Positions 1 through 45,222 are shown, counted from the first letter of the stretch. The stretch: 64,000 nt of DNA from IMGVR_UViG_3300033141_006329:62001-126000, one strand, 5' to 3'. Program-made: numbers and translations. Notes: generated by a model from the letters alone, not told the origin.

Positions 1-2992
1 TGATTCCAAAACCATGAGTCGAAGGTGTAGCGGCAGAACCATCAGAATCAACAGTCTTAACAACCGTATCCTCTAAACTAACTGCACCTGAAGAAACATC
101 AAAGTCAGCCGTTGCAAACGAAGCAACGCCCTTCTGTGAATCTGTAGCATCCTTAGCTGTAATTGTAACTGTAGTACCAGTGGCTGATGTATCAATACCT
201 TGTGCATCAGTACCTGCTATAGTTGCTTGATGTGATGAAAATGTAGCGGTTCCACTATCGCTAGCAATTGATTTGGCTACACTATTATCAAGACTAATAA
301 TACCAGTAGTATCATCAAAATCCTGAGATACAAATGTAGCAACACCCTTTGTAGAACCATCGGCTGCTGCATTATCGCCGGCAATACTAATATTATTATC
401 AGAAACTGTAGTTGTAATACCAGTTCCACCCGCAACAACAAGCGTTTCACCAAGAGAAACAGTATCATCATCACCGCTATCGCAATCTATTGTTATAACA
501 CTATTTGCAAGATTATCATTGGTAACACCACTAGATTTTATTCTAATGCCATCAGATCCATTAAACTCCAATCCATCAGCCGCATCTAATTTAACTTGTA
601 AATCATTACCATTTAAAGTAAGACCAGCATCTGCATCATAGTCGGCTTTAAATACATCACCGTCTCTCTGAACACCGTGACTACCAGATAAATCATCTAT
701 AGTATCTGTAGCAGCAATTGTTATCGTATCTGTATTAGGATCTGTTGTAATCACAATGTCATTACCTGCTGCAAATGTAAGTGTATCGGTTTCACCATCT
801 GCAACTACATTACTTTGTCCAGACACGGCAACGGTTTTAAATACATCTTTAGTAGCCTGAGTATCATAAATTTCCTCAAGGGCACCTTCCACTGTCGTAG
901 CAGTAAATTTAGCACTTGAATCTAATATTGGTATATCTTCAGCATTAACTTGATTTGCTCCTTCTCCCCAGTCGATTAAAGTATCATCAATACCATTTGC
1001 AACTAAAGAAACATTACCTGTAGTAACGGAGAAATGATTAGAATCAAACTTAGCAATACCTTTATTGCTATCACTTGCATCTTCACCTGCTATAGTAATA
1101 TCTGCACCAGCACCTGATGTGTCAATACCTTCTCCACCCTTAACACCAAAACCATGAGTTGAAGGTGTCGCAGCAGATCCGTCAGAAGCAACAGTTTTAA
1201 CAACCGTATCTTCTAAAGTTACTGCACCGGCTGCAACATCAAAATCACCACTATCAAATTGAGCTATACCCTTAACAGCAGTACTTGCATCAGAAGCTGT
1301 AATCGTAATTTTACCCGAAGAAGTTGTAGTTGCTATACCAGTTCCACCCTCTATATCAAGAGTTTCACCCAAACTTATATCATCTGTCCCTGCATCATCA
1401 GAAGTAACTGTGATGTGATCATTTGCCAATTCAGCATTAGCAACACCATCATCTTTTATAGTTACTACACCACCAGCAACACCAAAGTTATCACCGCTAA
1501 AACTAGCAATACCTTTATTAGATGTTGAAGCAGCTTCTCCCGAAACTGTGAGTGTATTTGCTTCATCGTCATAAGATATGTCTACACCATCACCTTCAAC
1601 CAATAATGATGATACTCTATCATCACATAACTCATCACTAAAGAATTTCTTAGTTCCTTCAGTTATGTCATCGGTTGTAGCATCGGCAGATATAACACCA
1701 GCAGTAACTTTAACAACACCAGTTCCTGATCCAATTGTAGCACCTGCAAATGTAGGACTCGATCCAGTAGCAATTGTTTGATCTAATCCATCCAGATTTC
1801 CAAATTCAGTAGTAGTAAGAGCATTTGCACCTATTGTAAATCCCGTAGCGGTCAAAACCTGTCCAGCATTCCAAGCTCCACTCAATCCTCTTGTACCATC
1901 TGCTCGTAAATATTGAGCATGATCATCATCAGCTAGTCCTTGTAATGAACCATGATCCTGCGTAGATCCAATATTAACCCAAGCTGTACCATTAAACTGA
2001 TAATTAGTATCTTCATCTTCTACCCAACAAGACATACCTTCCTCTACCGAATTAAAATTCCAAGTTCCATCATATATAGCTATATCATCTTCATGTCCAG
2101 CCCAATCGCCAGTAGCATTAGTCGAATCAACTATATATCTATCGCCTGTACTTTCTCCGCCTGGAGGGGTAGCCAAATCCTTATCCAAAACACTATCTTG
2201 CCAATCCAATCCATTCAACTGTGAAATAACATAACCTTTAGTAGCTACATCTGTATTATCATCAGGTGTTGCAACATTAGTTACTTTATTACCACTCATA
2301 GATTGATTACCAGAAAATGCTCTAGTACCGTCAACTAATATATATTGCGTATGGTCATCATCTCCTCTTCCAGTAAGAGTTCCATGATCCAACGAATAAT
2401 TTGCTTCTAAAAAAGTCCTATTAACAGCATCTCCACCATCTACTGGATTTGCTACGTTAGTAAGCTTTTTTGATCCCATTGACTGATCGCCAGTAAATGC
2501 TCTGGTTCCATCTGCCAATGTATATTGTGTATGGTCATCATCATCACGGCCAGTTAATGCGCCATGATCATCTGTACCTAGTAACTCACTTCTTCCTATT
2601 CTGCCTCTTGATACCTCTGCCCAATCTCCAACTGTATCCAGATATAAAAATCTTATTACATACCCTAATTTTAAATCAAACCCACCAGCTCCATTTATAC
2701 CATTTCCACTAGCAAGGGTAACATAATCTGTATCGCTACCACCCACTAAAGTAAGTTCTTGGCAATTTTCACCATCCGCAATTTGCGGGTTGCTGGTTAA
2801 TGTTATATTGCCACCATCAGTGGTGACTATAAGAGTATTACGATTTGGGATTATCTGGGCACTAGCTGCTGTTATTTGTAACGTATTGGGGTAACCCACA
2901 CTAGATTCTATCCAATCATAGAAATCTTGCTGGGTAGGTTTATCCCCCGCTTCAAATTTTGTTTTCAAATATGCAACATCTTTTACCGCCAT
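1..2992 (-). CDS. Large fibre-like virion structural protein, partial (runs off the left edge; not in ORF track)
   Basis: ATG at 2992 with GGAGG RBS. Hand translation [24 protein letters not shown]... stays open where read, and is in frame at position 2. Has three DHGxLxGxxDDDHxQY repeats, a DUF2793-like segment ([36 protein letters not shown]) and the ATPSTHxFGxKGG / GEDAS..NKGIA repeats shared with 11587..15282. Confidence 0.85.
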
Positions 2993-11586: not shown

Positions 11587-14500
11587 TTAATTAGACGCCC
11601 AATAAGAAACGATAATTTGATCGCCTGTATCAGGAGCAGTAGCAAAAGTCATTGTGGACCCGGCCAATGTATAATCATTGCCTCCTCCGCTATTTTGGAG
11701 TAGTCCATTCAAATAAACTTGCTCAGATCCTGAGATCGGAGTGTAATCTACTGTGAAGTCAGTAATAATATCATTAGGTGACTCATTAACGCCTTCTCTA
11801 ATTACGAAACGTCTGACTAAGCCAGTTCCAGCACCTAGTCCGATGGTCAAAGTACCAGCAGAAACGTCTAAAGTTTTTGCAGCACCAACAGTAATATCAG
11901 AAGTCGCAATAGTACAACCATCAATTGTACCTGAGTCAATATCAACCTTAGTAATATTCACTTCACCAGTTCCATCAGGTGTTAAATTAATATCACCATT
12001 AGAATCTGTAGAAGTAATACTATTTCCATCTAATCCTAAATTATCAATAGCAACAACACCAGTACCCTTAGGAGTAATATTAATACTGATATTATCATCA
12101 GTACCGTCAGCTGATAAAGTCGTTCCAACTAAGGTCACACCAGCAGCTGTGACATTAGTATCAAATGTCGTAGATTTGCTTAATGTAGTCGTACATGTAG
12201 CAAATGCAGCAACGGTAGAATCTGTACTAAGATCCTGATTAATTATAGAATCATCTTCAACTGTTATAGTCTTAGCATCAGCAGAATATGTAATCGTACC
12301 AGAATAGCCATCACCAACTGTTAAACTTTCGTTCATAGTAAGTGTATTAGCTTGCGTAAGAGAAGTAATAGTAACATCTGTACCATCACCAATTGTAAGA
12401 TTCTCATTCAGTTCAAGAGTTCTCAAAGCATTTTGTGTATCAATTGCTAATTGAACTTTCTCTCCACCAGAACCCGTTAATTCTATATCCGTACCATCTA
12501 ATACTGCCAAATTTTCACTAAGATCTAAAGTCCTAGTTCCATCTTGTGTATCAATATTCAATGAGGCTGCTTCTCCGCCCGATGCGGTTAGTGTTAAATC
12601 CTGACCATCACCAAGAGTTAAATCTTCATTAAGGGTCAATATACGATCAACGCCACCAAGAGCAACTGTCATATCTTCGCCGTTAGAATCTGTAAGTTTA
12701 ACAACTTCATTACTTGATAACGAAGTATTTAAAACTCTACCATTTGTAGTACCATCAGGAACTTCGTCTAAATCAACTTGATTTTCACCTGAACCCCAAT
12801 CTATATGAGTAGTATCAATACCATCAGCTTTAAGTCTCAGAGTATCAGTATCGATTTCTATAGTATCATCATCAACAACGACTGCAAGTATTCCTGTAGT
12901 GTGACTAAGACCAGCACCCGCAACAGAAGCTTCTAATCTAATACCAGATGTGCCATTAAATTCTAAACCACCAGCAGCATCAAGATTAACTCCAATAGTA
13001 TCACTATTTAATGCAAGACCTGCAGATGTACTAAAATCTAATTGGAAATCATCTGTCACTCTCTTAACACCAAGACTGGCAGATAAACTAGAAGAACCAC
13101 TAGAAGACACTGTTACCGAGTCCCCGGCTGCACTAGTTGTAAGCGTAATATCAGTTCCCGCGACGAATGTTAATGTATCAGCTTCTGCATCAGCTACAAC
13201 ATTATCCTGTCCTGAAACTGCAACTGTTTTAAATGCAAATTTAGCTGCTTGTGTATCAAACAACTCTTCAAGAGCACCTTCGACTGTTGTAGCAGTAAAA
13301 TTATTAGTAGTATCTACAATAGGCATATCATCAGCGCCAACTTGTCCTGCACTAGTTCCCCAATCAATTAGTGTATCATCAATACCATCAGCTACCAATG
13401 AAATAGCACCACTTGTAGCTGAAAAATGATCAGAATTAAAAGATGCTACACCCTTAGCAGATGTACTAGCATCATCACCAGTAACTGTAATATCAGCACC
13501 AGCACCTGAAGTTGTTATACCAGTTCCACCCTTAATACCAAAACTATGAGTACTTGGAGTAGCCGTACCACTATCAGAAGCAACAGATTTTGTAACTGTA
13601 TCTTCCAAGCTAATAACACCAGAAGAATCATCAAAGTCAGCTGCTGTGAATGCAGCAACACCCTTTGTAGAACCATCGGCAGCAGCATTGTCACCAGTAA
13701 CGGTAATATCAGCACCAGCACCTGAAGTTGTTATACCCGTACCACCCTTAATACCAAAACTATGAGTACTAGGAGTTGCAGCATCACCATCAGAAGCAAC
13801 AGATTTTGCAACTGTGGTTTCAAGACTAACTTCACCAGAAGAAACATCAAAATCTTCAGCTAAGAACTTAGCAACACCCTTGTTAGCTGTACTTGCATCT
13901 TCACCAGCTATAGTAATTGCATCGCCAGAAACTGTAGTCGTTATTCCTTCACCTTCAGTAAATGTAAATGTATCACCCAAATCTACAGCTTGGCTTCCAC
14001 CACCTATAGCTCCACCAGCCATAGTAATAGTAGGAGTCAAGAGTTTAGCATTTGAAACACCATCATCAGCAAGAGTTACATCACCAGTTGTTACTACGAA
14101 ATGTGTAGAATCGAAAGTTGCAACACCCTTGTTGGTATCACTTGCATCTTCACCAGAAACAGTAATAGTATCAGCAGTAACAACAGTATTAATACCTTCA
14201 CCTGCTGCTATTGTAAGAGTATCTCCTAAATCTAAATCATTGGGAGTCCCACTCTCAGCATCTAAAGTAATATGATCATGAAGTATATGAGAGTTCAAAA
14301 TACCGTGAGGTTTTACAGCTAATTGATCACTAACAATACCTAACGTAGCATCATCATAATCAACACTTATAGTCTTATCAGGTGACGCACCAGAAAGAGT
14401 AAGACCATCGTTTGCAGTAAGATCAACTGAAAGAACACCAGTCGTAACCGACAAACCATCAGAAATCTTAACTTTTCCCCATTCAGATGTACTTGCATAA

Positions 14501-19898: not shown

Positions 19899-20078
19899 TT
19901 ATTCCTCTACTTTCATAAATTTTTCAATGACTTCTTTCGAAATTGGTTTAGGATACACACAATATTTTGTCGATCCTGGAATCATATTTCCTATATTCTT
20001 TTTATCCTGCTCTGTGAGTATTACCATTATAGGCTCCTGCTCGCCACTATATACTTTATCGCCTACTTTAATTTTCAT
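19899..20078 (-). CDS. Small hypothetical protein (59 aa, not in ORF track)
   Basis: MKIKVGDKVYSGEQEPIMVILTEQDKKNIGNM...; GGAGG RBS. Confidence 0.65.
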   Translation of the reverse strand: MKIKVGDKVYSGEQEPIMVILTEQDKKNIGNMIPGSTKYCVYPKPISKEVIEKFMKVEE

Positions 20079-20349
20079 CTACCTCCCCTAAAATTCCATA
20101 AACTTCATTCATTAATAAGACCTTATAAATTACTCTATCAAGAATCATATCCATCCCTGCACTCCGATGAAACATTATAGTATCACCAACTTTAATATTT
20201 TCCACTTCCTCTCCTATAGATGTGACTACACCATATCCTTGTGGATCTTTGTTCACACCAGATGGTAATATAAGACCTCCATCTGTTATAGATTCTGGTT
20301 CAAATAATTTAACTGCTAATTTGTCTTTAACTGTTTGAATTGTTTTCAT
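20068..20349 (-). CDS. groES: Co-chaperonin GroES (Cpn10) family
   Basis: T.GGLILP mobile loop, G.V..IG, IKVGD.IMF, YKVL...EVYGIL. Confidence 0.8.
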   Translation of the reverse strand: MKTIQTVKDKLAVKLFEPESITDGGLILPSGVNKDPQGYGVVTSIGEEVENIKVGDTIMFHRSAGMDMILDRVIYKVLLMNEVYGILGEVDEN

Positions 20350-20948: not shown

Positions 20949-21221
20949 TTAACCAAATAATTCTGTTCTTATTCCTTCTAATATTTTATATATCGAATCG
21001 CACCGTTCATTAATTGTATTTGGACCGTTGTTTAAAATATCAATCAGGCTGGATGTCGCTACTTCCTTACATTCCTCAATTGGTAATATCTCATTATGAA
21101 TATCAGCAGATAGTATTAAAACATATCTTTTCAACTCATCTAATCTATCAATTGCCTCTTCCAATTTCTCATGTTTGGCGGTCTTTTTTGCTTCAATTTT
21201 TTCCGGTATTGTGGTAGCCAT
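20949..21221 (-). CDS. Helical hypothetical protein, tandem paralogue 1 of 3
   Basis: AI.RLDE...L.D.L..GP..I..R...I.K....IRT.LFG shared with the next two ORFs. Confidence 0.65.
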   Translation of the reverse strand: MATTIPEKIEAKKTAKHEKLEEAIDRLDELKRYVLILSADIHNEILPIEECKEVATSSLIDILNNGPNTINERCDSIYKILEGIRTELFG

Positions 21222-21239
21222 AATTTTATTTCTCCTTTC

Positions 21240-21506
21240 TTATCCAAACAATATTGTTCTTAATTCTTTAATCATTTTCAACATTTTACTTCTATGGGCG
21301 TCTAACTGCTCTGAACCTTTATCTAAAAAATCCATAAGATTTGACATTTTTTCTTCAACTACTTCATTCTCTAGTCTATCTTGACCTGTAATTTCTGCCA
21401 ATAACGAGTTTAATAGGTTTTCTGTCTCATCTAATCTGCAAATAGCAATGCTAATTGTCTCATGTTTTTTAGTATTATTGTCCTTCTTTACATCATTATC
21501 AATCAT
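21240..21506 (-). CDS. Helical hypothetical protein, tandem paralogue 2 of 3
   Basis: KHE....AICRLDE...LMDFLDKG....ELRTILFG. Confidence 0.65.
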   Translation of the reverse strand: MIDNDVKKDNNTKKHETISIAICRLDETENLLNSLLAEITGQDRLENEVVEEKMSNLMDFLDKGSEQLDAHRSKMLKMIKELRTILFG

Positions 21507-21520
21507 TTATTTCTCCTTTC

Positions 21521-21841
21521 TTAATCTCCGAATAGTACTGTTCGCACTTCGTTTATGATTTTACATATTGAAACACATCTGTCTCTAATTCTAACTGGGC
21601 CACCGTCTAAAACTCCTCTTAGACTCGGTTTTAGTCTTTCTTCTGAACTATCTTCATCTGCTGCAGGATTACAACAAACATCATCTAACAATCTTGAAAT
21701 AGCTCTTTCTACGTCATCCAATTCACAAATGGCATTGTCTAATTCCACATGTTTTTCTATCTGTTTTTTCTTACAATCCAGACCTTCTACAATTTCACAA
21801 TGTTCGGTCCCTCTTGCTGTCTTCATATTATATCCTGACAT
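21521..21841 (-). CDS. Helical hypothetical protein, tandem paralogue 3 of 3
   Basis: KH.ELDNAICELDD...LRGVLDGGP.RIRDRC..I.K...EVRTVLFG. Confidence 0.65.
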   Translation of the reverse strand: MSGYNMKTARGTEHCEIVEGLDCKKKQIEKHVELDNAICELDDVERAISRLLDDVCCNPAADEDSSEERLKPSLRGVLDGGPVRIRDRCVSICKIINEVRTVLFGD

Positions 21842-24945: not shown

Positions 24946-25245
24946 TTAACCTATTGTGACCCTTGCACCACAAGTATAAAATCCCGCTTCATCTAGTTCC
25001 CCATACTGTAACAATACACTTATCCAGAAACTATCTTCATTTACATCTATTGGTCCAATAGAATAATCCATCAAATCGTTTTCTCCTAAATGTTTCTGCA
25101 ATTCTAAATCAACTTCGTCGGTAAGGGCCTCTAAGCACTCTTCGGTTGGTTGACTATTTTGAAATCCTCTAGCTATTTCTATGATGGTTTTTTCTATTTC
25201 GATTCCATCGTTTACACATCTACATAATATATCAAATACAGTCAT
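24946..25245 (-). CDS. Hypothetical protein
   Basis: 99 aa, AGGAG RBS. Confidence 0.55.
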   Translation of the reverse strand: MTVFDILCRCVNDGIEIEKTIIEIARGFQNSQPTEECLEALTDEVDLELQKHLGENDLMDYSIGPIDVNEDSFWISVLLQYGELDEAGFYTCGARVTIG

Positions 25246-25260
25246 CTTTTATTTCTCCTA

Positions 25261-26229
25261 TTATTTCTTAAGGGTTTGAAGTTGTCGTCCGAGTTTCACA
25301 GTCTTATACACCATTGCCATGAAGTGTACTGGGGGAATCATTGCTTCCATGTGTGAATTGGCATAATCATTAATTATAATTTTTGCCCAGACGGGAACAT
25401 TTGCATCGTAGAATAATTCCTGATATAAAGATCTATAATCTAACTCATTTGTCGTTAAATATTTTGTGAGATTGTTTATAGATTGGCTAACTATGGAGGC
25501 TTTGTTTTGAGTGATTCCTAAGAATGTTTCTGATAATAATGACCTGACGATCTTCTCTTTAGATTCTATATCTTTACCCTTTATTTGTAACTTTCCGCCT
25601 TCACTTCTTGACTGGAGCATGTTCACAATTTTTCTAATGTCAGGGTAGAGTGTAGAGATAACTCTGTCTAATGCAATTTTATCATACTCTATATTTTCCT
25701 TTTCTAATATGCCTATACACATCTTTTCTATATATTCTTTAGGAACTTTTTTAAACTCGAATCGCTGGCATCTTGACTGAAGAGGATCTAAGATTTTATA
25801 GAGATAGTTACAAGTGAGTATAAATCGACCATTGGCATGATAAGTCTCCATAATATTTCTCAGACAAGCCTGAGCAGCTTGGGACAAGTAATCTGCTTCA
25901 TCTATAAAAACTATTTTAGTACGAGATCCCCCGAATGTAGGAGTCTTTAGAAAATCTTCGATATGATTTCGAACCGCATCTATGCCTGTAGAAGATGAAC
26001 CATTCATATACATAACATCCATATTATCTGAAGTTAATTTTTTTATTAAAATTCTTGAAATAGCTGTCTTACCACTTCCCGGAGGCCCAAAAATTAGCAG
26101 ATGCGGAATCTCTTTTTCATTGATAAATTTCTCAAATATTTTTCTGTAATCATCGGGTAATACCATATTCTCTAATTTTGAGGGTCTATACTTCTCCACC
26201 CACAAGTAATTTTTTTCCATATTTTTCAT
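25261..26229 (-). CDS. Sliding-clamp loader AAA+ subunit (T4 gp44/RFC-small-like)
   Basis: LWVEKYRP, GPPGSGKT Walker A, IDEAD Walker B, SRC motif. Confidence 0.9.
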   Translation of the reverse strand: MKNMEKNYLWVEKYRPSKLENMVLPDDYRKIFEKFINEKEIPHLLIFGPPGSGKTAISRILIKKLTSDNMDVMYMNGSSSTGIDAVRNHIEDFLKTPTFGGSRTKIVFIDEADYLSQAAQACLRNIMETYHANGRFILTCNYLYKILDPLQSRCQRFEFKKVPKEYIEKMCIGILEKENIEYDKIALDRVISTLYPDIRKIVNMLQSRSEGGKLQIKGKDIESKEKIVRSLLSETFLGITQNKASIVSQSINNLTKYLTTNELDYRSLYQELFYDANVPVWAKIIINDYANSHMEAMIPPVHFMAMVYKTVKLGRQLQTLKK

Positions 26230-26247
26230 AGAACCCCTCCCCTATTA

Positions 26248-26312
26248 ATTATGCTTTAACGTTTTTAATTTGTCCAGTCGTATGTGTGGAGTTTTGATTT
26301 TAATATAATTTA
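26248..26312. repeat. 65-bp exact direct repeat, copy 1 (contains the regulatory element)
   Basis: ATTATGCTTTAACGTTTTTAATTTGTCCAGTCGTATGTGTGGAGTTTTGATTTTAATATAATTTA, identical at 27938..28002. Confidence 0.8.
26266..26289 (-). promoter_or_regulatory. Class 1 element upstream of clamp loader
   Basis: CCACACATACGACTGGACAAATTA. Confidence 0.7.
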
Positions 26313-26320
26313 TTCCTCCT

Positions 26321-26566
26321 TTAATATGGCATCCCTTCATTTGGATCTGTTTCTTGTATTGCATCATAATCTTCAAATGTTTCTTTTGTCTTACATTTTG
26401 GGCACCTATATGTAATCATCGGAATCCTACAATTCAAATCCCCTCGAAAACAATCATATTTTGTCCATTCTTTATAAATACGAGATTCTTCAGGTACTTT
26501 TATCTTACATTTTTTACAATAAACTTCTCCTGTAAAATACTCATCAAAAATGTAATCGAACTTCAT
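26321..26566 (-). CDS. Small Zn-ribbon protein
   Basis: CKKC...CPKC; GGAGG RBS. Confidence 0.6.
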   Translation of the reverse strand: MKFDYIFDEYFTGEVYCKKCKIKVPEESRIYKEWTKYDCFRGDLNCRIPMITYRCPKCKTKETFEDYDAIQETDPNEGMPY

Positions 26567-26638
26567 TTTTTACTTCCTCCCATATTTTGTCCAACTCTTC
26601 CATTCTAATTCCCCCCCTGGTTGTGATTTTATTCTTTT

Positions 26639-26662
26639 TAATTTGTCCAGTCATATGTGTGG
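26639..26662 (-). promoter_or_regulatory. Class 1 element upstream of Zn-ribbon ORF
   Basis: CCACACATATGACTGGACAAATTA. Confidence 0.7.
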
Positions 26663-26672
26663 AGTTTCAACT

Positions 26673-27920
26673 TTAATTTGCTCCAATATCCTTCCTGTAA
26701 TACATGCCCTCAAAATGTGTTTTTTCTATTGCTCTATTAGTTAATTCTGAGGCTAATTTTAAATTAGAAGCCTTAGCCACAACGCTATACACACGACCCC
26801 CATTTGTAATTATTTCTCCATCTACATATTTCGTACCAGCATGAAATATTTTTGCTTCGCTATCTTCTATTCCACTTATTTCAAATCCCTTCACACATTC
26901 TCCTGGATATCCGCTAGATACTGCTACTTGACAAATAGCACTTTCATCTGACCATTCAATATCTGTCCAACCTAACATCCGATTGGTACAATTATCCATT
27001 ACTCTAACTAAATCACTTTTCAGAAGCATTAAAATAACCTGCGCTTCAGGGTCTCCGAGCCTAACATTATATTCTAAAACATAAGGCTCATCATCTTTGA
27101 TCATCAGTCCTATATAAAGAACTCCTCTATAATCAATTTTGCTTTCTTTTAACCCTTTAATTGTTAGGTTTATTATATTCTTTTCAATTTTCTCAAATAG
27201 TTCAGGTGTAATTAAATCATGTGGACAATATGAACCCATTCCCCCAGTGTTCAATGCACCTTCATCGGAATTTAACTTTTTATAATCCTTGGCAATTGGC
27301 ATAATCTTTGCTGTCTGTCCATCAAAAAACATCATACATGACGCTTCAAATCCTTCTATAAAATCCTCTATTAGAATATTATCTCCAGCTTCTCCAAATC
27401 TTTTTTCTACCATTATTTCATTTAATGCATATATACCATCTGACTTATCATTGCATATATAAACACCTTTTCCTGCGGCTAATCCATCTGCTTTAATAAC
27501 ATACTTACCTGACTTATTTTCAATATATTTTTTAGCAGAGTTAATATTAGAAAAAGTCCTAAAACTAGATGTAGGGATTTCATTCTTACACATAAAAATC
27601 TTAGCAAATATCTTACTTGATTCCAACCGTGCAGCCTTCTTATTTGGTCCAAATATTTTTAAACCCCTTCTCTCAAACTCATCTACTATTCCTAGACTCA
27701 GAGGTAATTCGGGCCCAACTACAGTTAGATCTATTTTTTCTTCTAATGCGAATTCAGCAAGACTTCCTATATCTGAAATATCTCCTGGTACACATTTAGC
27801 ATGTTTACTTATTCCGGGGTTTCCAGGTATGCATATTATTTCTGGTTTTTGTGGACTCTGGGATAGTTTCCATGTAATAGCATGTTCTCGTCCTCCAGAT
27901 CCTATAACTAATATCTTCAT
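26673..27920 (-). CDS. purD: Phosphoribosylamine-glycine ligase
   Basis: GSGGREHA, VVGPE.PL..G..D.F, LESSK.FAK, VIKADGLAAGKGV, D.K......G.NTGGMG, EYNVRLGDPE, HAGT, GGRV, YYRKDIG. Confidence 0.95.
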   Translation of the reverse strand: MKILVIGSGGREHAITWKLSQSPQKPEIICIPGNPGISKHAKCVPGDISDIGSLAEFALEEKIDLTVVGPELPLSLGIVDEFERRGLKIFGPNKKAARLESSKIFAKIFMCKNEIPTSSFRTFSNINSAKKYIENKSGKYVIKADGLAAGKGVYICNDKSDGIYALNEIMVEKRFGEAGDNILIEDFIEGFEASCMMFFDGQTAKIMPIAKDYKKLNSDEGALNTGGMGSYCPHDLITPELFEKIEKNIINLTIKGLKESKIDYRGVLYIGLMIKDDEPYVLEYNVRLGDPEAQVILMLLKSDLVRVMDNCTNRMLGWTDIEWSDESAICQVAVSSGYPGECVKGFEISGIEDSEAKIFHAGTKYVDGEIITNGGRVYSVVAKASNLKLASELTNRAIEKTHFEGMYYRKDIGAN

Positions 27921-27937
27921 ATATAATCCCCTTTATT

Positions 27938-28002
27938 ATTATGCTTTAACGTTTTTAATTTGTCCAGTCGTATGTGTGGAGTTTTGATTTTAATATAATT
28001 TA
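27938..28002. repeat. 65-bp exact direct repeat, copy 2
   Basis: Identical to 26248..26312; offset 1690 bp. Confidence 0.8.
27956..27979 (-). promoter_or_regulatory. Class 1 element upstream of purD
   Basis: CCACACATACGACTGGACAAATTA. Confidence 0.7.
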
Positions 28003-28016
28003 ATCCTCTTTCTCCT

Positions 28017-28838
28017 TTATAAATTTTCTATTACTTTTGTCACTCTTATTGCACTATCAATATTGGTCTCAGCGTCGCCATTAAGGATATGCTTAAATTT
28101 CTCTACTGAGTTTTTCAGATATTCTGACCCATCGCCAGACGGTGAATGACTCAACCCATTATACATTTCTATAGTAACAGAGTCAATGTACCCATGATTA
28201 TATGTTACTCTCCCTTTCTCAAAAAAGAAAACAAATTCGAATTTATATTCTTTCATAGCATTTACTATTATATTTCCCATATCACCAACTATAACATCAT
28301 TGAAATAATTTGTATCTTTATCTTTAACAGATTTAAAACTCATCTTATCTACATCTGAAACTAAATCTATGACACTTAATACGTGGGAAGTAAGCAACCA
28401 ATTGCAGGATTCTTGGGGGTTTTCTACTATTTTACAACGGTGACAGGTTGTATATTTGAGTGGTCCTATTACATGATTTGTTAACCTTACTTGTTTTAAT
28501 ATATTTAATATAGGGGATGATTGCATTTGGTAATCTACATATAACTTTAATCCTTTTCTATTTGCTATATCTCTAAGTTCTTCAGCTTCTGCTGTGGTTT
28601 TTGCTATTGGTTTTTCCAGGAATACATGCTTACCAGCTTCTAAAGCTTTTTTAGCTATTTTGAAATGAGTAGGTATCGGGGTTGCTATAAAAACTGCTTC
28701 TATATCCTCTCTCAATAATATATTATCTAATGACTCTTCTTTCGTAGTGGTAATCAACTCAAAGTTTTTCTCTATGTAAGGGGTGAGAATATTCCCCCAC
28801 CTACCTGTGCCTATTAATGCTACTTTTATTTTATTCAT
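28017..28838 (-). CDS. Gfo/Idh/MocA-family NAD(P)-dependent oxidoreductase
   Basis: KVALIGTGRWG, VFIATP..THF..A..AL.AGKHVFLEKP. Confidence 0.85.
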   Translation of the reverse strand: MNKIKVALIGTGRWGNILTPYIEKNFELITTTKEESLDNILLREDIEAVFIATPIPTHFKIAKKALEAGKHVFLEKPIAKTTAEAEELRDIANRKGLKLYVDYQMQSSPILNILKQVRLTNHVIGPLKYTTCHRCKIVENPQESCNWLLTSHVLSVIDLVSDVDKMSFKSVKDKDTNYFNDVIVGDMGNIIVNAMKEYKFEFVFFFEKGRVTYNHGYIDSVTIEMYNGLSHSPSGDGSEYLKNSVEKFKHILNGDAETNIDSAIRVTKVIENL

Positions 28839-29743
28839 AATGTCTCCTTTAATTTTTCTTTGAAAAGATCAAATCTATTTTTAATACTATGATTTTCTAA
28901 TATAAATCTCATGGCCGAATTTCTTATTTTATCAAAATCATTTGGATTTTTCAATACCTCATCTAATTTGGAAAATAAATTATGTTTAGAAATTTCTATA
29001 TAATGTATATTTTTTCGAAAGCCCAATTTATCAAGATCGGGAGTTTCATTAGCTAACAAAAGTGAACCAGTAGCAGGAATTTCAAAATATTTACGAACCA
29101 CATAATCAAATTTTGACGAGGTAGTCAGACAGCAAAAATAAGTCCTTAAAGTTTTATAATAATCTATCCCTACTTTACTCTTATTTATATCTATTTTTGT
29201 ATAACCGGGATGTTTTAGGAATTCAATATGTTTATTATTCTGACTCAACGCAAAGTGTCTTAATGGATAGAAATTTTTATCAATGCAACCAGAAACTAAA
29301 CATTTCATAATTGGATTTTTATTAATATCAGAAAAAGAATGAGGAACAACAAAATGTGGAAACCATTGGTATTTATGGATAAACTCCGAATAATCTTTTC
29401 TAAATGCATAGTCATATGGACATAATATTAGATCTGCCCTTCTCATCATATTTTTGTAATTATTTTTAGTCTCATTGTTACCATGTATATCAGTATTATA
29501 AATTATTAATTTTTTATTCTTTGGGAGATTTAATAATCCTTTCATCAAATTTATTGCTCTTTTTCCATGTGGACACTTATATGTTATTATAATATCCTCA
29601 TTGATATCATGTGGATCATAATTATCAGCATAGACAATATTAAAACCAAATTCTTTTTTCAGCATCTCAAAAAAACAAATATATCTGCCTACTACTATAG
29701 GATTATCTTTAAATGTATTTGGTATTATAATTAATCCCTTCAT
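28835..29743 (-). CDS. GT-B glycosyltransferase (Glyco_trans_1_2/CgeB-like)
   Basis: VRKYFEIPATGSLLL...G.....HYI...IR......I...HS...R; paralogue of 31631..32542. Confidence 0.75.
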   Translation of the reverse strand: MKGLIIIPNTFKDNPIVVGRYICFFEMLKKEFGFNIVYADNYDPHDINEDIIITYKCPHGKRAINLMKGLLNLPKNKKLIIYNTDIHGNNETKNNYKNMMRRADLILCPYDYAFRKDYSEFIHKYQWFPHFVVPHSFSDINKNPIMKCLVSGCIDKNFYPLRHFALSQNNKHIEFLKHPGYTKIDINKSKVGIDYYKTLRTYFCCLTTSSKFDYVVRKYFEIPATGSLLLANETPDLDKLGFRKNIHYIEISKHNLFSKLDEVLKNPNDFDKIRNSAMRFILENHSIKNRFDLFKEKLKETL

Positions 29744-30883
29744 TTATTTCTTACCCTCGAAAATACTCTCATAAATAGTAGAAATTTCACAACCCATTCT
29801 ATTGCACCTTATACCCTTACTAAAGCATTTTTCATTACAACTAAATTCAGGATCATAATTTTTCATAATCATTTCTTTAAACTTCTCTAAATCGTCTGTA
29901 GCTTTTCCCAAACGACATTGGGGGGCTGTAGGTGTAGCTGCTGTTGAGCATTTGTATACATAACCATCAGCGCCATATGTGATCTGATAATAGCCGTAAG
30001 CGCATTTATTAAAGTTGAATTTGGTATCAATATCTGTAAACTCTGGTCCTGTATAGAATATGTACGGGCGCTCTTCTTTTGTCTCTGATAAATATTTCTT
30101 TAGTGCATCATAATATTGTTGAGAGCCTGTCACTTCTACTCTTTCTTTATATTCTCTTACTTCATCAAATGATTGATTGTAATTTGCAAATGGAATACTA
30201 AACCTGAGCGAGTCCACGCCTATATCTTTAGCAATTTTGACAATTTCTTGAAAATCCTCATGAGTACAACTGTGTGGTGAAATAAGATAACAAAGTCTGA
30301 TAGCATGTCCTTTATAGTTTTGAGACTTTCTTATGTATACAGCGTTCCTTATGCCTTTAACTATCTGATTAAATAATTCATAATTTTTTGAACCTTTAAC
30401 TTTGCACCATGATCTTGATGTTCCAGCATCTATACTTATAGATAAATAATCAGTAGGGTCAGAAATTCTATTCATTTCAGTAAGAACACCGTAATTATCC
30501 TCCAAATCTTTAAGCAAGATAGCATTGGTATGTATACCAAAATGATTATTATATTTTTTAGTCATTGCAAGAAAAGCCATAAAATAAGGATTTCCAAGTG
30601 GTTCTGTATAAGCGCCACCGTAGATATGATAAGGTATTTTGCCTTTTAATTTATCCATAAGCGATAGAGCATCTGCCTCCCAATGTCCCAACGCTTTATT
30701 GAATAATTTACCAGCACAATGACTACAATGCAACTGACAAGGCTGTTTATGATCGTTAGGCAAATGCACCTCCCATTGACGAGGCCAAACAAATTCTCCA
30801 GAGAACATTCTCTCAGGTTTATTATCTAAGTGTTTCATCAATTGTTTCCAGTAGAGGTATTCCTCAGGTCTCATATCAATCAT
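29744..30883 (-). CDS. Radical SAM protein with C-terminal Cys-rich (SPASM/twitch-like) domain
   Basis: CQLHCSHC (CxxxCxxC), GG.YTEP, TN, SIDAG; C-terminal C...GADG.VY.C...C...C...C. Confidence 0.8.
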   Translation of the reverse strand: MIDMRPEEYLYWKQLMKHLDNKPERMFSGEFVWPRQWEVHLPNDHKQPCQLHCSHCAGKLFNKALGHWEADALSLMDKLKGKIPYHIYGGAYTEPLGNPYFMAFLAMTKKYNNHFGIHTNAILLKDLEDNYGVLTEMNRISDPTDYLSISIDAGTSRSWCKVKGSKNYELFNQIVKGIRNAVYIRKSQNYKGHAIRLCYLISPHSCTHEDFQEIVKIAKDIGVDSLRFSIPFANYNQSFDEVREYKERVEVTGSQQYYDALKKYLSETKEERPYIFYTGPEFTDIDTKFNFNKCAYGYYQITYGADGYVYKCSTAATPTAPQCRLGKATDDLEKFKEMIMKNYDPEFSCNEKCFSKGIRCNRMGCEISTIYESIFEGKK

Positions 30884-30884
30884 T

Positions 30885-31634
30885 TTATTTATTCTCCTTT
30901 ATACAAAAATTATCTAATATCTGTTTATTAGCTGGTTTGCCTCTAAACGAATTGTTAAGATTTTTATCATGTATCATTTGTAACCAAAAAGGACTACCAT
31001 TTCTGATTTGTTCAACTGTGAATAATCCATTCATCTTCCAGTGAACTATTCTAAAACAAGTTTTTAGATAATTTTCTGTCAGTGGTTCTATGACTGTGAT
31101 GTAGGGGTTTGGAGGGCGGGGGTAATCCAAGGTTGTTATACCTTTATTTTTTATATTATATATAGTTCCATTTATAGGATTTAATAATCGCTCCTTTGGT
31201 GAAAATTCTTCTTGCATTATTTTTATATAATTTTTATTTAAAGCATCGTCGCAATCTAATCTGGAGGTTATAATCCAATTAGTTTCTGGATTTAATTGTT
31301 CTTTTATCTTATTTGAAAACCACTGATACATGGTGAATCTCTCATAGTTTTCATAATCTATGTATATAGGGATCATTCTATCATATTTTTCTAATAAATT
31401 TTTATTAGTATGATTCTCATCAAATAAAACCATCCATTTGAAATTTTTATTGGTCTGTCCTGCTATCGATGGATAACAATATTTATCGAAAAGCCTTAAT
31501 CGATGTTTAAACCATTCGTCTGTAGGCATATCTTCATGATTAGGTCTTTTAAGTTTTCTCCCTGTTATACATTTTGACCATTGCATGTAAACATTAAATT
31601 GCGTCAAAAGGAAATGTTCGAATTGTATACTCAT
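30885..31634 (-). CDS. Putative glycosyltransferase (GT-A, putative rhamnosyltransferase-like)
   Basis: HFLLTQFN, W..HRL.LF..YC.PSI..QTN.NF.W.VLFD, ITSRLDCDDAL. Confidence 0.7.
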   Translation of the reverse strand: MSIQFEHFLLTQFNVYMQWSKCITGRKLKRPNHEDMPTDEWFKHRLRLFDKYCYPSIAGQTNKNFKWMVLFDENHTNKNLLEKYDRMIPIYIDYENYERFTMYQWFSNKIKEQLNPETNWIITSRLDCDDALNKNYIKIMQEEFSPKERLLNPINGTIYNIKNKGITTLDYPRPPNPYITVIEPLTENYLKTCFRIVHWKMNGLFTVEQIRNGSPFWLQMIHDKNLNNSFRGKPANKQILDNFCIKENK

Positions 31635-32542
31635 AGTGTCTCCATCATTTTATTAAATATTTTTAAATTATTTTTTTCAGTAGAGTTTTCCAATACAAAT
31701 CTTCTTCCTTCTCTTCTAATATCTTCATATCTTTCAGGGTTCTTTAATACAGTATCTAATGTCTCGAAGAAATTATTTTTAGTAATTTGAATATAATGAA
31801 CTTTATTTTTGATACAAAAAAAATCCAAATCCGGAGTATATGTAGCCAATAATAATGATCCAGAGGCCATTATTTCAAAATATTTGCCTACCACAAAGTC
31901 CATTATTGTCGCAGTAGTAACACTACAAAAATATTTATTTAATTCTTGAGCATATTTAAACCCTACAGTAGAGCCTGGATTATCTGTTCTCCATCCTGAA
32001 TGTGGCAACACGACTATATTTTCAGTCTTATGCTTATATATATATTTCCTAATAGGATATAACCTTTGATTATAACGACCTGTAAATAAACATTTCATTA
32101 TAGGTTCTTTGTTTAATTCTAATTTGGAGTAATATTCCGAACTTGCAAATTGTGGGCAATTAACATATTTATCTATATAATCTGGAAATATTTTTGTGAA
32201 TGCAAAATCGTGAGGGTTTAATATTACGTCAGCTCTATCCATTAATTTTTTCAATTTTTTTACAAATTCAACATCACCTGGCCGATTACAACCGTGCAAG
32301 TCGATCATATATAGTATAAGCTTTTTATCTTTAGAAAGATTAATAAGCCCCTTATATAAATGAATTTCATCTGCTCGTGGTGTCCTGAAAACTAAAATAA
32401 TATTTTCTTCTACCTTACTTACGTCCCAGGTTTTTGTATATCCTATTCTGTAATCTAATAAATTCAGAAATGCTAAATATTTTTTTACTATAGGAAAACT
32501 CTCTTTATCTCTTAGAGGAATTAATATTAAACCTTTAGACAT
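31631..32542 (-). CDS. GT-B glycosyltransferase (Glyco_trans_1_2/CgeB-like)
   Basis: VVGKYFEIMASGSLLL...VHYI...YE.IR..GR.FV. Confidence 0.75.
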   Translation of the reverse strand: MSKGLILIPLRDKESFPIVKKYLAFLNLLDYRIGYTKTWDVSKVEENIILVFRTPRADEIHLYKGLINLSKDKKLILYMIDLHGCNRPGDVEFVKKLKKLMDRADVILNPHDFAFTKIFPDYIDKYVNCPQFASSEYYSKLELNKEPIMKCLFTGRYNQRLYPIRKYIYKHKTENIVVLPHSGWRTDNPGSTVGFKYAQELNKYFCSVTTATIMDFVVGKYFEIMASGSLLLATYTPDLDFFCIKNKVHYIQITKNNFFETLDTVLKNPERYEDIRREGRRFVLENSTEKNNLKIFNKMMETL

Positions 32543-32634
32543 ACGAATATCCTCCAGGTATACATTTGCTCCACCTCATAAAAAATATTAAACTGGGCTA
32601 AGATAAAATGTTCGAAATTTAGATTCATGATAAG

Positions 32635-32853
32635 TTATCCTGCAACCTTCTCTGGGTTTCCCAATTGTGTTTTTATAAATTCATTTAAAAGAGTGTTATG
32701 ATGTTTACACAAATGAAATGTTCTAGCAAGATCCACATGCTCTGATTTATCATCCATATAACACGCTTCAGTTATAACTATTTTCTTATCTCCATTATAT
32801 ATATCTAATTCTTTCCCACATACATCACAAAAATATTTGACTTCTTTACTCAT
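32635..32853 (-). CDS. Small Cys/His protein
   Basis: FCDVCG...HLCK.H motif. Confidence 0.55.
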   Translation of the reverse strand: MSKEVKYFCDVCGKELDIYNGDKKIVITEACYMDDKSEHVDLARTFHLCKHHNTLLNEFIKTQLGNPEKVAG

Positions 32854-36763: not shown

Positions 36764-37117
36764 TTAGTTTGTCCAGTTGTATGAACGGTTATTTTCTATT
36801 AGATTTTTTAATAATCTCCTATGACAATTTCTATCACTCTTTTCCCAACACAACAGAGTAATCAATTCTCCATCATCACTTCTCTTCTTTAATTCTTTGA
36901 TCAGATTCTTCCTACTCTCCATCTCTTTTAAGTATCTCGTTTCATAATCATCCCAATCAATAGTCTTTGCCCTATAATCATTCAACAGTTCTATAGACGG
37001 CGCTAATTTCTTTAACCACTCATCATAATCATAGAAATTTTTAATCCATCTCATCACACAAATTCTTGTGCCATCATCTTCATTTTTTTCACTCATAATA
37101 CTTTTTGTTTTAATCAT
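36764..37117 (-). CDS. DUF488/YeaO-family protein
   Basis: DDG.RI.V.R, DEWLK.LAPS.EL, W..Y..RY..EM, ITLLC.E....CHR..L. Confidence 0.8.
   Translation of the reverse strand: MIKTKSIMSEKNEDDGTRICVMRWIKNFYDYDEWLKKLAPSIELLNDYRAKTIDWDDYETRYLKEMESRKNLIKELKKRSDDGELITLLCWEKSDRNCHRRLLKNLIENNRSYNWTN
36765..36788 (-). promoter_or_regulatory. Class 1 element upstream of 665-aa gene
   Basis: CCGTTCATACAACTGGACAAACTA. Confidence 0.65.
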
Positions 37118-37143
37118 TGATTCCCCTTTGATTTTATTCTTTT

Positions 37144-37167
37144 TAATTTGTCCAGTTGTTTGACTGG
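37144..37167 (-). promoter_or_regulatory. Class 1 element upstream of DUF488 gene
   Basis: CCAGTCAAACAACTGGACAAATTA. Confidence 0.7.
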
Positions 37168-37503
37168 TTATTCTTCTGTGGGTGGTAAGGGTCTTTTTAG
37201 TTTCACTTTATCGTCGATTACTTTGATAATTTTCCAGTTATCTTTAGTTTCTTGATATTGATCTTCCTCAATTCTACGTCGGATATTTTTCTCTGCTGTT
37301 TCCTGGTCCCAGTAGATTTCTATTTCTTCAGAGGAACCACCTAAATCACGATTCGATACATCCTCCCAATTAAGTATGGTAGCTTTATCATATTTCCATT
37401 TATAATTAAAATGGTACCATTTTCTAACCCATTTTAAAATTAGACCTGTTCCTTTTCTTTGTATTTTATAAAATCTTCCATTACTGACTATCTTATATAT
37501 CAT
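37168..37503 (-). CDS. Hypothetical protein
   Basis: 111 aa; GGAGG RBS within the 34-bp leader cassette. Confidence 0.6.
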   Translation of the reverse strand: MIYKIVSNGRFYKIQRKGTGLILKWVRKWYHFNYKWKYDKATILNWEDVSNRDLGGSSEEIEIYWDQETAEKNIRRRIEEDQYQETKDNWKIIKVIDDKVKLKRPLPPTEE

Positions 37504-37510
37504 TTTTAGT

Positions 37511-37544
37511 CCTCCTATATGATTTATGTTTTTAGTTTGTCCAG
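37511..37544 (-). repeat. 34-bp motif/leader/RBS cassette identical to 51891..51924
   Basis: CTGGACAAACTAAAAACATAAATCATATAGGAGG in both places (opposite strands). Confidence 0.85.
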
Positions 37545-37556
37545 TGTCGGAAGAGG
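37533..37556 (-). promoter_or_regulatory. Class 1 element upstream of 111-aa gene
   Basis: CCTCTTCCGACACTGGACAAACTA. Confidence 0.65.
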
Positions 37557-45212: not shown

Positions 45213-45222
45213 TAGTTTGTCC
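45213..45222 (-). promoter_or_regulatory. Class 2 element upstream of the GT2 operon
   Basis: gaataaaGGACAAACTAAAAAC. Confidence 0.55.

What the first reader, a model, noticed from the sequence alone, without database searches (positions are those of the whole stretch)
26248..28002. purD plus Zn-ribbon gene flanked by an exact 65-bp direct repeat: a promoter-bounded cassette
Seen: identical 65-bp repeats 1690 bp apart bracket purD and the 81-aa ORF, and a third partial copy (about 26636-26668) lies between those genes. Each repeat contains the class 1 element. Established: repeated promoter cassettes (PeSLs) mediate modular gene shuffling in T4-type phages. Inference: recombination between repeats can excise, amplify or insert the cassette, giving a route for auxiliary gene capture.
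Basis: partly seen in the sequence, partly recalled or inferred. Interest (0 to 1): 0.6.

Follow-up and report, generated by a model that had tools for sequence, protein, structure and literature searches.

The report
Duplicated promoter-like element flanking phage purD
In a large T4-type phage genome from a metagenome, the regulatory region in front of a core replication gene has been copied exactly in front of a purine-synthesis gene (purD), which fits a known way for phages to shuffle genes, but no movement of the unit could be observed.

Summary
An exact 65-bp direct repeat lies at 26248-26312 and 27938-28002, 1690 bp apart, with a partial third copy at 26612-26694.

All genes here are on the minus strand, so each copy sits just upstream of a start codon: clamp loader, an 81-aa Cys-rich ORFan, and purD.

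The repeats belong to a genome-wide family of promoter-like elements. The core GGACAAAYTANARA occurs 37 times, at least 29 of them within 60 nt upstream of a start on the same strand. About 17 "class 1" members add an A-tract and a CC box.

The clamp-loader copy is ancestral, because relatives keep an element at that position. The purD copy is a recent duplicate or a gene-conversion product.

purD and the ORFan form the proximal end of a 6.6-kb insertion. In most relatives the same junction is a 50-90-nt spacer. The sister purD in related phages lies in a different slot and has no repeats.

Sequence on the two sides of the invariant core shows different relationships among family members, which points to recombination within the core.

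This resembles PeSL-type modular shuffling, but the elements have no stem-loop or terminator, so they are not PeSLs. Excision, circles or amplification could not be tested because no sequencing runs were listed.

Host-gene capture through these repeats is not supported. The finding is moderately interesting: a new variant of a known kind.

The parts
27938..28002 (-). Exact 65-bp repeat, copy upstream of purD. It is a class 1 promoter-like element whose 17-nt core (sense ACTGGACAAATTAAAAA) lies at 27952-27968. It contains a sigma70-like TGGACA-17-CATAAT.
26248..26312 (-). Exact 65-bp repeat, copy upstream of the clamp-loader gene (core at 26262-26278). This is the ancestral copy, because an element is conserved at this position in relatives L005, L010, L011, L013 and L017.
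26612..26694 (-). Third, partial and mosaic copy upstream of the 81-aa ORF (core at 26635-26651). Its upstream half resembles the 65-bp copies (23/30). Its downstream 11-12 nt are identical to the element at window 37129-37156.
26673..27920 (-). purD (phosphoribosylamine-glycine ligase, 415 aa), full length. Its own ribosome-binding region (27921-27937) lies outside the repeat and resembles that of the purD in relative L007.
26321..26566 (-). 81-aa Cys-rich ORFan, a putative zinc ribbon. No homologue was found other than itself.
26544..26603 (-). 19-codon mini-ORF with a strong G-rich SD. It lies between the third element and the 81-aa ORF and overlaps that ORF's start in another frame.
25261..26229 (-). 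Clamp-loader (gp44/RFC-like AAA+) gene, a core gene served by the left repeat.
26321..32853 (-). 6.6-kb block absent from the same junction in relatives. In order of transcription it holds a 72-aa ORF, a glycosyltransferase, a rhamnosyltransferase-like gene, a radical SAM gene, a glycosyltransferase, a GFO/IDH/MocA oxidoreductase, purD and the 81-aa ORF. Only its last two genes carry elements.

Best explanation
The two 65-bp repeats are two copies of one complete intergenic regulatory region. That region belongs to a clade-specific family of promoter-like elements, with an A-tract, a CC box, a fixed 11-nt gap from the CC onward, and then ACTGGACAAAYTAAAAA. The elements lie 11-56 nt upstream of start codons throughout this T4-type jumbo phage. 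The copy in front of the clamp-loader gene is the ancestral one. The copy in front of purD is a recent duplicate or a gene-conversion product. As a result purD, and with a related element the 81-aa ORFan, is read from the same signal as a core replication gene, which makes sense for an enzyme that feeds purine nucleotide supply. The arrangement element-purD-element'-ORFan-element-clamp loader most likely arose by homologous recombination between dispersed elements, with the phage's own RecA/UvsX-like recombinase available. That recombination would have stacked 'element + gene' modules directly upstream of the resident clamp-loader element, in a junction that is a hotspot for insertions in this phage clade. 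The same direct repeats make deletion or looping-out of the 1690-bp unit possible. What is shown: the repeat, the element family, the conservation at this position, the variable slot, the mosaicism, and the different purD slots. What is inferred: promoter function, recombination as the cause, and any present-day mobility.
For: The repeat is exact, and its homology spans the whole intergenic region. It is the longest near-exact pair in the element family. Other family pairs share only chance-level identity outside the core (median 12/30 and 10/30), so function alone does not explain 65/65 identity. The family has 17 strong class 1 members with none in a shuffled genome. The core occurs 37 times, at least 29 within 60 nt upstream of a start on the same strand, and core-derived 8-mers are the main non-SD words upstream of genes. 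An element is conserved upstream of the clamp loader in relatives at 52-69% protein identity. In relatives the ~394-aa gene (207-421 aa range for its neighbours) abuts the clamp loader with 50-90 nt between them. In L011 a 557-aa gene fills the slot, in L043 an unrelated ORFan does, and here 6.6 kb does. The same stacking is seen upstream of the core ~690-aa gene, at 36777, 37156 and 37545, where ORFans carry elements. Mosaic pairs exist: the Zn-ORF copy and the element at genome 61325 share only the upstream half with the 65-bp copies, while the elements at 37545 and 51890 share only the downstream half, through to the ATG. In L005 two elements 4 kb apart are 36/39 identical, including positions that are not conserved across the family, which indicates homogenisation within a genome. 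purD is monophyletic with phage L007's purD but lies in another slot. Five more distant relatives lack purD. A RecA-like recombinase is present.
Against: No molecule with a single repeat, a circle or a tandem amplification was seen, and no reads were available. No close relative (above 72% clamp-loader identity) exists in the collections to show a presence/absence polymorphism bounded by the element. Five of the seven inserted genes carry no element, so most of the 6.6-kb block entered some other way. Relatives hold purD without repeats. Promoter function is unproven. The family has no consistent sigma70 -35/-10, no sigma factor was detected in the 223-kb record, and in a few genes the core lies only 11-15 nt from the ATG, which is tight for a transcription start ahead of the SD.
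Confidence: 0.55

Rival explanations
1. Co-regulation only. purD arrived with the 6.6-kb block by illegitimate recombination. Its upstream region was later overwritten by ectopic gene conversion from the clamp-loader region 1.7 kb away, or was selected for identity. On this view the repeats are not, and never were, the boundaries of a mobile unit.
For: The rest of the inserted block has no elements. Elements are homogenised within a genome in L005. purD's own ribosome-binding region lies outside the repeat and matches that of L007. No excision products were seen.
Against: Element + ORFan modules are stacked directly upstream of two different ancestral core-gene elements, and the mosaic halves are joined at the core. 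Both patterns are what element-to-element crossover predicts. Gene conversion is itself recombination between the elements, so this rival differs only in whether genes move along with them.
Confidence: 0.25
2. The element acts at the RNA level, for example as an mRNA processing site or a translational operator just 5' of the SD, rather than as a promoter. The repeats would then be duplicated leader sequences.
For: The distance to the start codon is short and variable (11-56 nt). The family has no consistent sigma70 hexamers. No sigma factor was found.
Against: There is no predicted structure better than shuffles and no Rfam family match. The putative CCAGT/ACTGG stem shows no covariation: the right arm is invariant and the left arm varies freely. 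The A-tract and fixed spacing are typical of DNA-level recognition. Back-to-back divergent copies at 45222(-) and 45266(+) sit where leftward and rightward gene blocks diverge.
Confidence: 0.12
3. Assembly artefact. A 65-bp repeat made the metagenome assembler place the purD-ORFan segment here, when in fact it belongs elsewhere or to another strain.
For: The sequence is a metagenome contig. The repeat is long enough to confuse small k-mers. No reads could be checked.
Against: Homology continues beyond the exact 65 nt with mismatches and indels, which is unlike a collapsed or duplicated assembly node. The segment would still need an element at both ends wherever it truly lies. GC and GC3 of purD and the ORFan match their neighbours. 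The only other contig on record is the 306-kb source contig of the same record.
Confidence: 0.05

Closest known systems
PeSLs (promoter-early stem-loops) of T4-type phages RB49/phi1, PST and nt-1 (Arbiol et al. 2010, PMC2839356; Comeau et al. 2014, PMC4122927)
   Same: [quoted passage not shown] Both have an AT-rich upstream part, are placed in front of ORFans and accessory genes in variable regions of a T4-type genome, show chimeric or mosaic copies, and form direct repeats flanking one or two genes.
   Different: There is no stem-loop or terminator here. The family consensus is not the sigma70 consensus. The elements also serve core genes, where they are conserved across relatives. Mini-circles and indels between near-identical phages, which are the experimental basis of the PeSL model, have not been observed here.
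T4 promoter classes: middle promoters with an upstream MotA box plus a -10, and late promoters with TATAAATA only
   Same: A shared -10-like A/T-rich core (TAWAAA) occurs either with an upstream box (class 1, mostly replication-region genes) or without one (GGACAAACTATAAA, for example near the capsid gene and large structural genes). This comparison rests on established T4 knowledge and is an inference.
   Different: The sequences differ (GGACAAAY precedes the core, and a CC box replaces the MotA box). No gp55, MotA or AsiA homologue was sought or shown, and no transcription data exist.
Viral purD auxiliary metabolic genes reported from metagenomes, e.g. two purD genes in CPR viruses (PMC12647753)
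   Same: A lone purD sits in a phage genome. The clamp-loader relatives of this phage are deposited as 'Candidatus Peribacteraceae' MAG contigs.
   Different: The host here is unknown. No other pur gene (purN, purM/L, purC) was found in the 223-kb record. The reported cases say nothing about flanking repeats.

Membership tests
PeSL (promoter-early stem-loop) cassettes | Repeated intergenic motif, mostly immediately upstream of ORFans or accessory genes in hyperplastic regions | tested here: met
   There are 17 strong class 1 members and 37 cores, at least 29 of them upstream of starts. Copies precede the ORFans at 26321-26566, 36764-37117 and 37168-37503 inside blocks absent from relatives. 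Copies also precede core genes.
PeSL (promoter-early stem-loop) cassettes | [quoted passage not shown] | tested here: inconclusive
   The two 65-bp copies have TGGACA-17-CATAAT (10/12) and an A-rich upstream part. Other family members have no -10 at that spacing. The number of promoter-like hits in the region is not above that in shuffles (15 vs 12.8).
PeSL (promoter-early stem-loop) cassettes | Stable stem-loop acting as a terminator or attenuator | tested here: not met
   No terminator-like sites were found in 25800-28400. The minimum free energies of the three intergenic regions and of the repeat equal those of shuffles (z from -0.28 to 0.73).
PeSL (promoter-early stem-loop) cassettes | Recombination between copies: chimeric motifs, and indels bounded by motifs between related genomes | tested here: inconclusive
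   Mosaic halves are joined at the core, and the slot is variable. No relative is close enough to show an indel bounded by the element.
PeSL (promoter-early stem-loop) cassettes | Mini-circles or deletion junctions detectable in DNA | not testable with these tools
   The look-up of sequencing runs listed no run.
T4-type phage | Gp23-type major capsid protein and a T4-like replication and recombination set | tested here: met
   PF07068 Gp23 scores 99.9 bits. There is a gp44/RFC-like clamp loader with a weak Gp44_lid hit, a primase PHROG and a RecA-family protein at 64.5 bits.
PurD (GAR synthetase) | GARS_N, GARS_A (ATP-grasp) and GARS_C domains, full length | tested here: met
   The domains score 132.9, 233.7 and 93.7 bits against cut-offs of 29.5, 27 and 34.8. 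Residues 1-413 align to solved PurD 2yw2 at E 5e-110.
PurD (GAR synthetase) | Catalytic activity, and a role during infection | not testable with these tools
   This needs an enzyme assay or complementation of a purD mutant.
Zinc-ribbon proteins | Two CxxC knuckles forming a zinc site, and a family match | tested here: inconclusive
   C17xxC20 and C55xxC58 are read directly from the sequence. Pfam Zn_Ribbon_TF scores 24 bits, below the cut-off of 29. There are no homologues. The Atlas look-alikes are small Zn-ribbon-like hypothetical proteins, and the Atlas model has pLDDT 0.54.
Known purine-related leader RNAs (riboswitches, purD motif) in Rfam | Match to a covariance model upstream of purD | tested here: not met
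   There were no matches at E<=1 in 25500-28600 on either strand.

The most novel reading that the evidence does not exclude
In an uncultivated clade of T4-type jumbo phages, possibly infecting CPR bacteria, a clade-specific promoter class without any stem-loop serves as the portable homology for moving 'promoter + gene' modules. This includes the metabolic gene purD, which moves between slots around the replication genes. If so, PeSL-type shuffling is a general property of dispersed phage promoters and not of one composite motif.
Probability: 0.3. Interest if true: 0.5.

Novelty: new variant of a known kind. Interest (0 to 1): 0.35.

Why it matters
If recombination between these elements is confirmed, it would extend promoter-mediated modular shuffling, so far documented in cultured T4-like coliphages, Yersinia phages and vibriophages, to a distant jumbo-phage clade known only from metagenomes. 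It would also show that the terminator stem-loop is dispensable and that a metabolic gene, not only ORFans, can be repositioned in this way. The analysis also defines a conserved and previously undescribed regulatory motif (GGACAAAYTAWAAA, with an upstream A-tract and CC box in class 1). No paper in the held library contains it. It could be used to annotate transcription units in this clade. As it stands, the finding is a well-documented but expected kind of phage genome architecture.

Tried and rejected
- **Read evidence.** The look-up of sequencing runs on 25800-28400 listed no run, so junction, circle and coverage tests could not be done and read laying was not used.
- **Close relatives.** Single-protein scans of viral contigs with the clamp loader and with purD found none. 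Exact-pattern scans for the element in metagenome and viral contigs also found none. The nearest phage record by DNA is a trivial 108-nt hit in Staphylococcus phages.
- **Hairpin idea (CCAGT-N6-ACTGG).** Rejected: the right arm is invariant, the left arm varies without compensation, and the folds equal shuffles.
- **Riboswitch or known RNA family upstream of purD.** None found.
- **Sigma70 promoter reading for the whole family.** Rejected: only the two exact copies have a -10 at 17 nt.
- **Phage sigma factor.** No Sigma70_r2 or Sigma70_r4 domain was found in the record.
- **Homologues of the 81-aa ORF.** None by word search or PHROGs. It is unrelated to the gene after purD in L007 and to the nearby 72-aa Cys ORF.
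- **Recent capture of purD from a host.** Rejected: the nearest cellular purDs are 51-53% identical, the sister is a phage purD, and the composition is ameliorated.
- **purD tree.** The careful tree did not finish in time, so the quick tree (SH-aLRT only) was used.

Full report
**1. The observation**

The window is bases 62001-126000 of a 223,370-bp IMG/VR virus record with 33% G+C. The record is itself cut from a 306,137-bp contig of JGI metagenome 3300033141.

An exact 65-nt direct repeat lies at 26248-26312 and 27938-28002, 1690 nt apart, and cannot be extended by a single base on either side. With mismatches and one or two indels, the homology covers 83-87 nt at 93-94%. That span runs from the stop codon of the upstream gene to the Shine-Dalgarno (SD) sequence of the downstream gene, so it is the whole intergenic region.

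A third, partial copy lies at 26612-26694. Its 28-nt core has one mismatch. No such match occurs in shuffled sequence.

All genes here are on the minus strand. The three copies are therefore the upstream regions of three genes:
- purD (26673-27920);
- an 81-aa Cys-rich ORF (26321-26566);
- a gp44/RFC-like clamp-loader gene (25261-26229).

purD is full length. Its three GARS domains score far above the Pfam cut-offs, and it aligns end to end with solved PurD structures.

The 81-aa ORF has two CxxC pairs and a zinc-ribbon Pfam hit below threshold. It has no homologue in the 5.8-billion-protein word search other than itself and no PHROG match. Its Atlas look-alikes are only weak zinc-ribbon-like hits.

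**2. What the repeated element is**

The repeat contains a 17-nt core, which reads ACTGGACAAATTAAAAA on the gene strand. A profile built from the core and its flanks finds 17 strong members in the genome and none in a shuffled genome.

The class 1 consensus is an A-tract, then CC, then 11 nt from the CC onward, then ACTGGACAAAYTAAAAA. The shorter core GGACAAAYTANARA occurs 37 times. At least 29 of these lie within 60 nt upstream of a called start codon on the same strand. My gene calls were crude, so the true number is higher. Words derived from the core are the main non-SD words enriched upstream of genes.

Copies without the upstream box, often reading GGACAAACTATAAA, lie near the Gp23-type capsid gene and large structural genes. 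Class 1 copies cluster in the replication region. Two copies lie back to back at 45222(-) and 45266(+), where the leftward and rightward gene blocks diverge.

The two exact copies also contain a sigma70-like TGGACA-17-CATAAT (10 of 12 positions). Other family members have no -10 at that spacing.

Several tests came back negative:
- no terminator-like stem-loop was found;
- folds are no better than shuffles;
- there is no Rfam match;
- there is no covariation in the putative CCAGT/ACTGG stem.

The element is not mentioned in the held literature. I read it as a clade-specific promoter or 5' regulatory signal. Promoter function is an inference, and an RNA-level role is not excluded.

**3. Comparison with relatives**

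Clamp-loader homologues at 52-72% identity lead to related phage contigs. Their conserved backbone, in gene order, is:
- a gene of about 690 aa;
- a gene of about 211 aa;
- a gene of about 394 aa;
- a 50-90-nt spacer;
- the clamp loader;
- a primase-like gene;
- a gene of about 130 aa.

This backbone is seen in L005, L010, L013, L017/L023 and the contig carrying P0126.

Here the three upstream genes lie at 36722-32876 and the clamp loader starts at 26229. So 26321-32853 is a 6.6-kb insertion in that junction. It holds a 72-aa ORF, two glycosyltransferases, a rhamnosyltransferase-like gene, a radical SAM gene, a GFO/IDH/MocA oxidoreductase, purD and the ORFan. None of these except purD has a counterpart in the relatives' loci.

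The slot is variable in other phages too. L011 has a 557-aa gene there. The closest relative, L043 (72% clamp-loader identity), has an unrelated ORFan there and no element.

An element is retained immediately upstream of the clamp loader in L005/L006, L010, L011, L013 and L017. The left repeat is therefore the ancestral clamp-loader element, and the purD copy is the derived one.

The motif family fades in L017's genome (two matches) and is absent from three more distant relatives.

**4. History of purD**

The best purD hit is P0002, at 57% identity, and it lies on phage contigs L007-L009. The next hits, at 51-53%, lie in cellular contexts. In a quick maximum-likelihood tree the two phage purDs are sisters, with SH-aLRT 100 on an internal branch of 0.36. 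The careful search did not finish, so there is no bootstrap.

In L007 and in the contig of P0126, purD lies in a different slot, after the primase-like and ~130-aa genes. The gaps there are 9-15 nt upstream and 2-15 nt downstream, and there are no repeats. In L013 that slot holds rpiB and thyA. In L005 and in this genome it holds other genes.

Five more distant relatives' records of 152-277 kb, one of them complete, have no purD.

The 17 nt between the repeat and the purD start resemble the L007 purD ribosome-binding region. purD's G+C and GC3 match its neighbours.

These results lead to three conclusions:
- purD is an old accessory gene of this phage clade;
- it occupies different slots in different lineages;
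- the 65-nt identity is much younger than the gene.

Capture of purD from a host through these repeats is therefore not supported. No purN, purM/L or purC was found in the record. Viral purD genes have been reported before, including in CPR viruses.

**5. Evidence for recombination between elements**

Outside the invariant core, family members are no more alike than chance, with median identities of 12/30 upstream and 10/30 downstream. The exceptions form a mosaic pattern:

| Pair | Upstream 30 nt | Downstream 30 nt |
|---|---|---|
| purD copy vs clamp-loader copy | 30/30 | 20/30 ungapped (more with one indel) |
| ORFan copy vs the 65-bp copies | 23/30 | 10-11/30 |
| Element at genome 61325 vs the 65-bp copies | 22/30 | 11/30 |
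| Elements at 37545 vs 51890 | 10/30 | 22/30 (a gapped BLAST match of 51 nt at 92% extends this similarity through the SD to the ATG) |

In addition, the ORFan copy's first 11-12 downstream nt equal those of the element at 37156.

Different histories on the two sides of a shared core are what crossovers within the core would produce. In L005 the elements of the ~690-aa gene and of the clamp loader, 4 kb apart, are 36/39 identical, including spacer positions that vary freely in this genome. This indicates homogenisation within a genome.

'Element + ORFan' modules are stacked directly upstream of two ancestral core-gene elements, those of the clamp loader and of the ~690-aa gene at 36777. The phage encodes a RecA/UvsX-family protein.

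**6. Interpretation**

The most likely account (confidence about 0.55) has three parts. The repeats are copies of a promoter-like region. Recombination between dispersed copies, either a crossover that carried purD and the ORFan in, or conversion after they arrived, produced the present arrangement. As a result purD is driven by the same signal as a replication gene.

The direct repeats would allow loss or looping-out of the 1690-bp unit by homologous recombination. That is a capability and has not been observed.

The rivals are:
- conversion for co-regulation without any gene mobility (0.25);
- an RNA-level role for the element (0.12), which does not affect the recombination argument;
- an assembly artefact (0.05).

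The artefact is disfavoured by the imperfect homology beyond the exact 65 nt, and because the segment would need flanking elements wherever it truly lies.

**7. Relation to known systems**

The closest known system is the PeSL cassette of T4-type phages. PeSLs combine a strong sigma70-like early promoter with a terminator stem-loop, lie mostly upstream of ORFans in hyperplastic regions, and recombine to give indels, chimeric motifs and mini-circles.

This genome is T4-type by its capsid protein and replication genes. Its elements share the placement, the modularity and the mosaicism of PeSLs. However, the stem-loop feature was tested and not met, the sigma70 consensus does not hold for the family, and circles or indels could not be tested. 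So this works like a PeSL system, as an inference, but is not a member of that family.

**8. Limits**

- No reads, long reads or transcript data were available.
- Relatives are distant, at 72% clamp-loader identity or less.
- The purD tree is a quick tree.
- Gene calls used for the genome-wide counts were made by a simple script.
- The host is unknown. The 'Candidatus Peribacteraceae' labels on relatives' proteins are only a lead.

Noticed in passing
window 26544-26603 (-): A 19-codon mini-ORF (MEELDKIWEEVKNEVRLHF) with a strong G-rich SD lies between the third element and the 81-aa ORF. It overlaps that ORF's start in another frame and could be a leader peptide or translational coupling device.
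   Followed up: partly
window 28017-32853 (-): An operon-like block is absent from all relatives' loci at this junction: a 72-aa Cys ORF, two glycosyltransferases, a rhamnosyltransferase-like gene, a radical SAM enzyme and a GFO/IDH/MocA oxidoreductase. It may be a sugar-modification cluster. It has no promoter-like elements inside it.
   Followed up: partly
window 45222 (-) and 45266 (+): Two promoter-like cores lie back to back, 44 nt apart, at the point where the leftward and rightward gene blocks diverge. This is a likely bidirectional control region.
   Followed up: no
window 36764-37545 (-): Three class 1 elements lie 379 and 389 nt apart, each preceding a small ORFan (117 and 111 aa) or the core ~690-aa gene. 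This is a second stack of 'element + ORFan' modules. Relatives L005 and L011 instead carry a gene with a faint hit to the I-TevI DNA-binding domain in this slot.
   Followed up: partly
window 20949-21841 (-): Three consecutive 88-106-aa ORFs look like diverged tandem paralogues, sharing a KH..AI.RLDE motif and a C-terminal RT.LFG. The neighbouring 93-aa ORF (20068-20349) carries a Cpn10/GroES Pfam hit in the source's gene table.
   Followed up: partly
window 1-1300 and 13100-14250: Several diverged repeats of 100-420 nt (72-85% identity) lie in and near genes related to tail-fibre-like proteins (Laminin_G_3/BclA_C in relatives). They probably reflect repeated fibre domains.
   Followed up: no
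genome G000:C1 156317-156366, 156596-156659, 157905-157968 (outside the window): Exact or near-exact repeats of 50-64 nt form the coding 3' ends of three neighbouring minus-strand genes (100, 149 and 324 aa). This is a shared C-terminal module, not a promoter element. A separate 640-nt repeat family at 86% identity lies at 130610-132859.
   Followed up: partly
whole record; relatives P0127 and P0128: IMG/VR labels the 223-kb record 'provirus', although it is cut from a 306-kb contig with a Gp23-type capsid gene. The clamp-loader relatives are deposited as 'Candidatus Peribacteraceae' (CPR) MAG contigs, which may hint at the host or may reflect mis-binning. A lone purD with no other pur gene in the record is unexplained.
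   Followed up: no
window 24946-25245 (-): A 99-aa ORFan is inserted between the clamp-loader and primase-like genes. In L005, L011 and L013 those two genes abut or overlap.
   Followed up: partly
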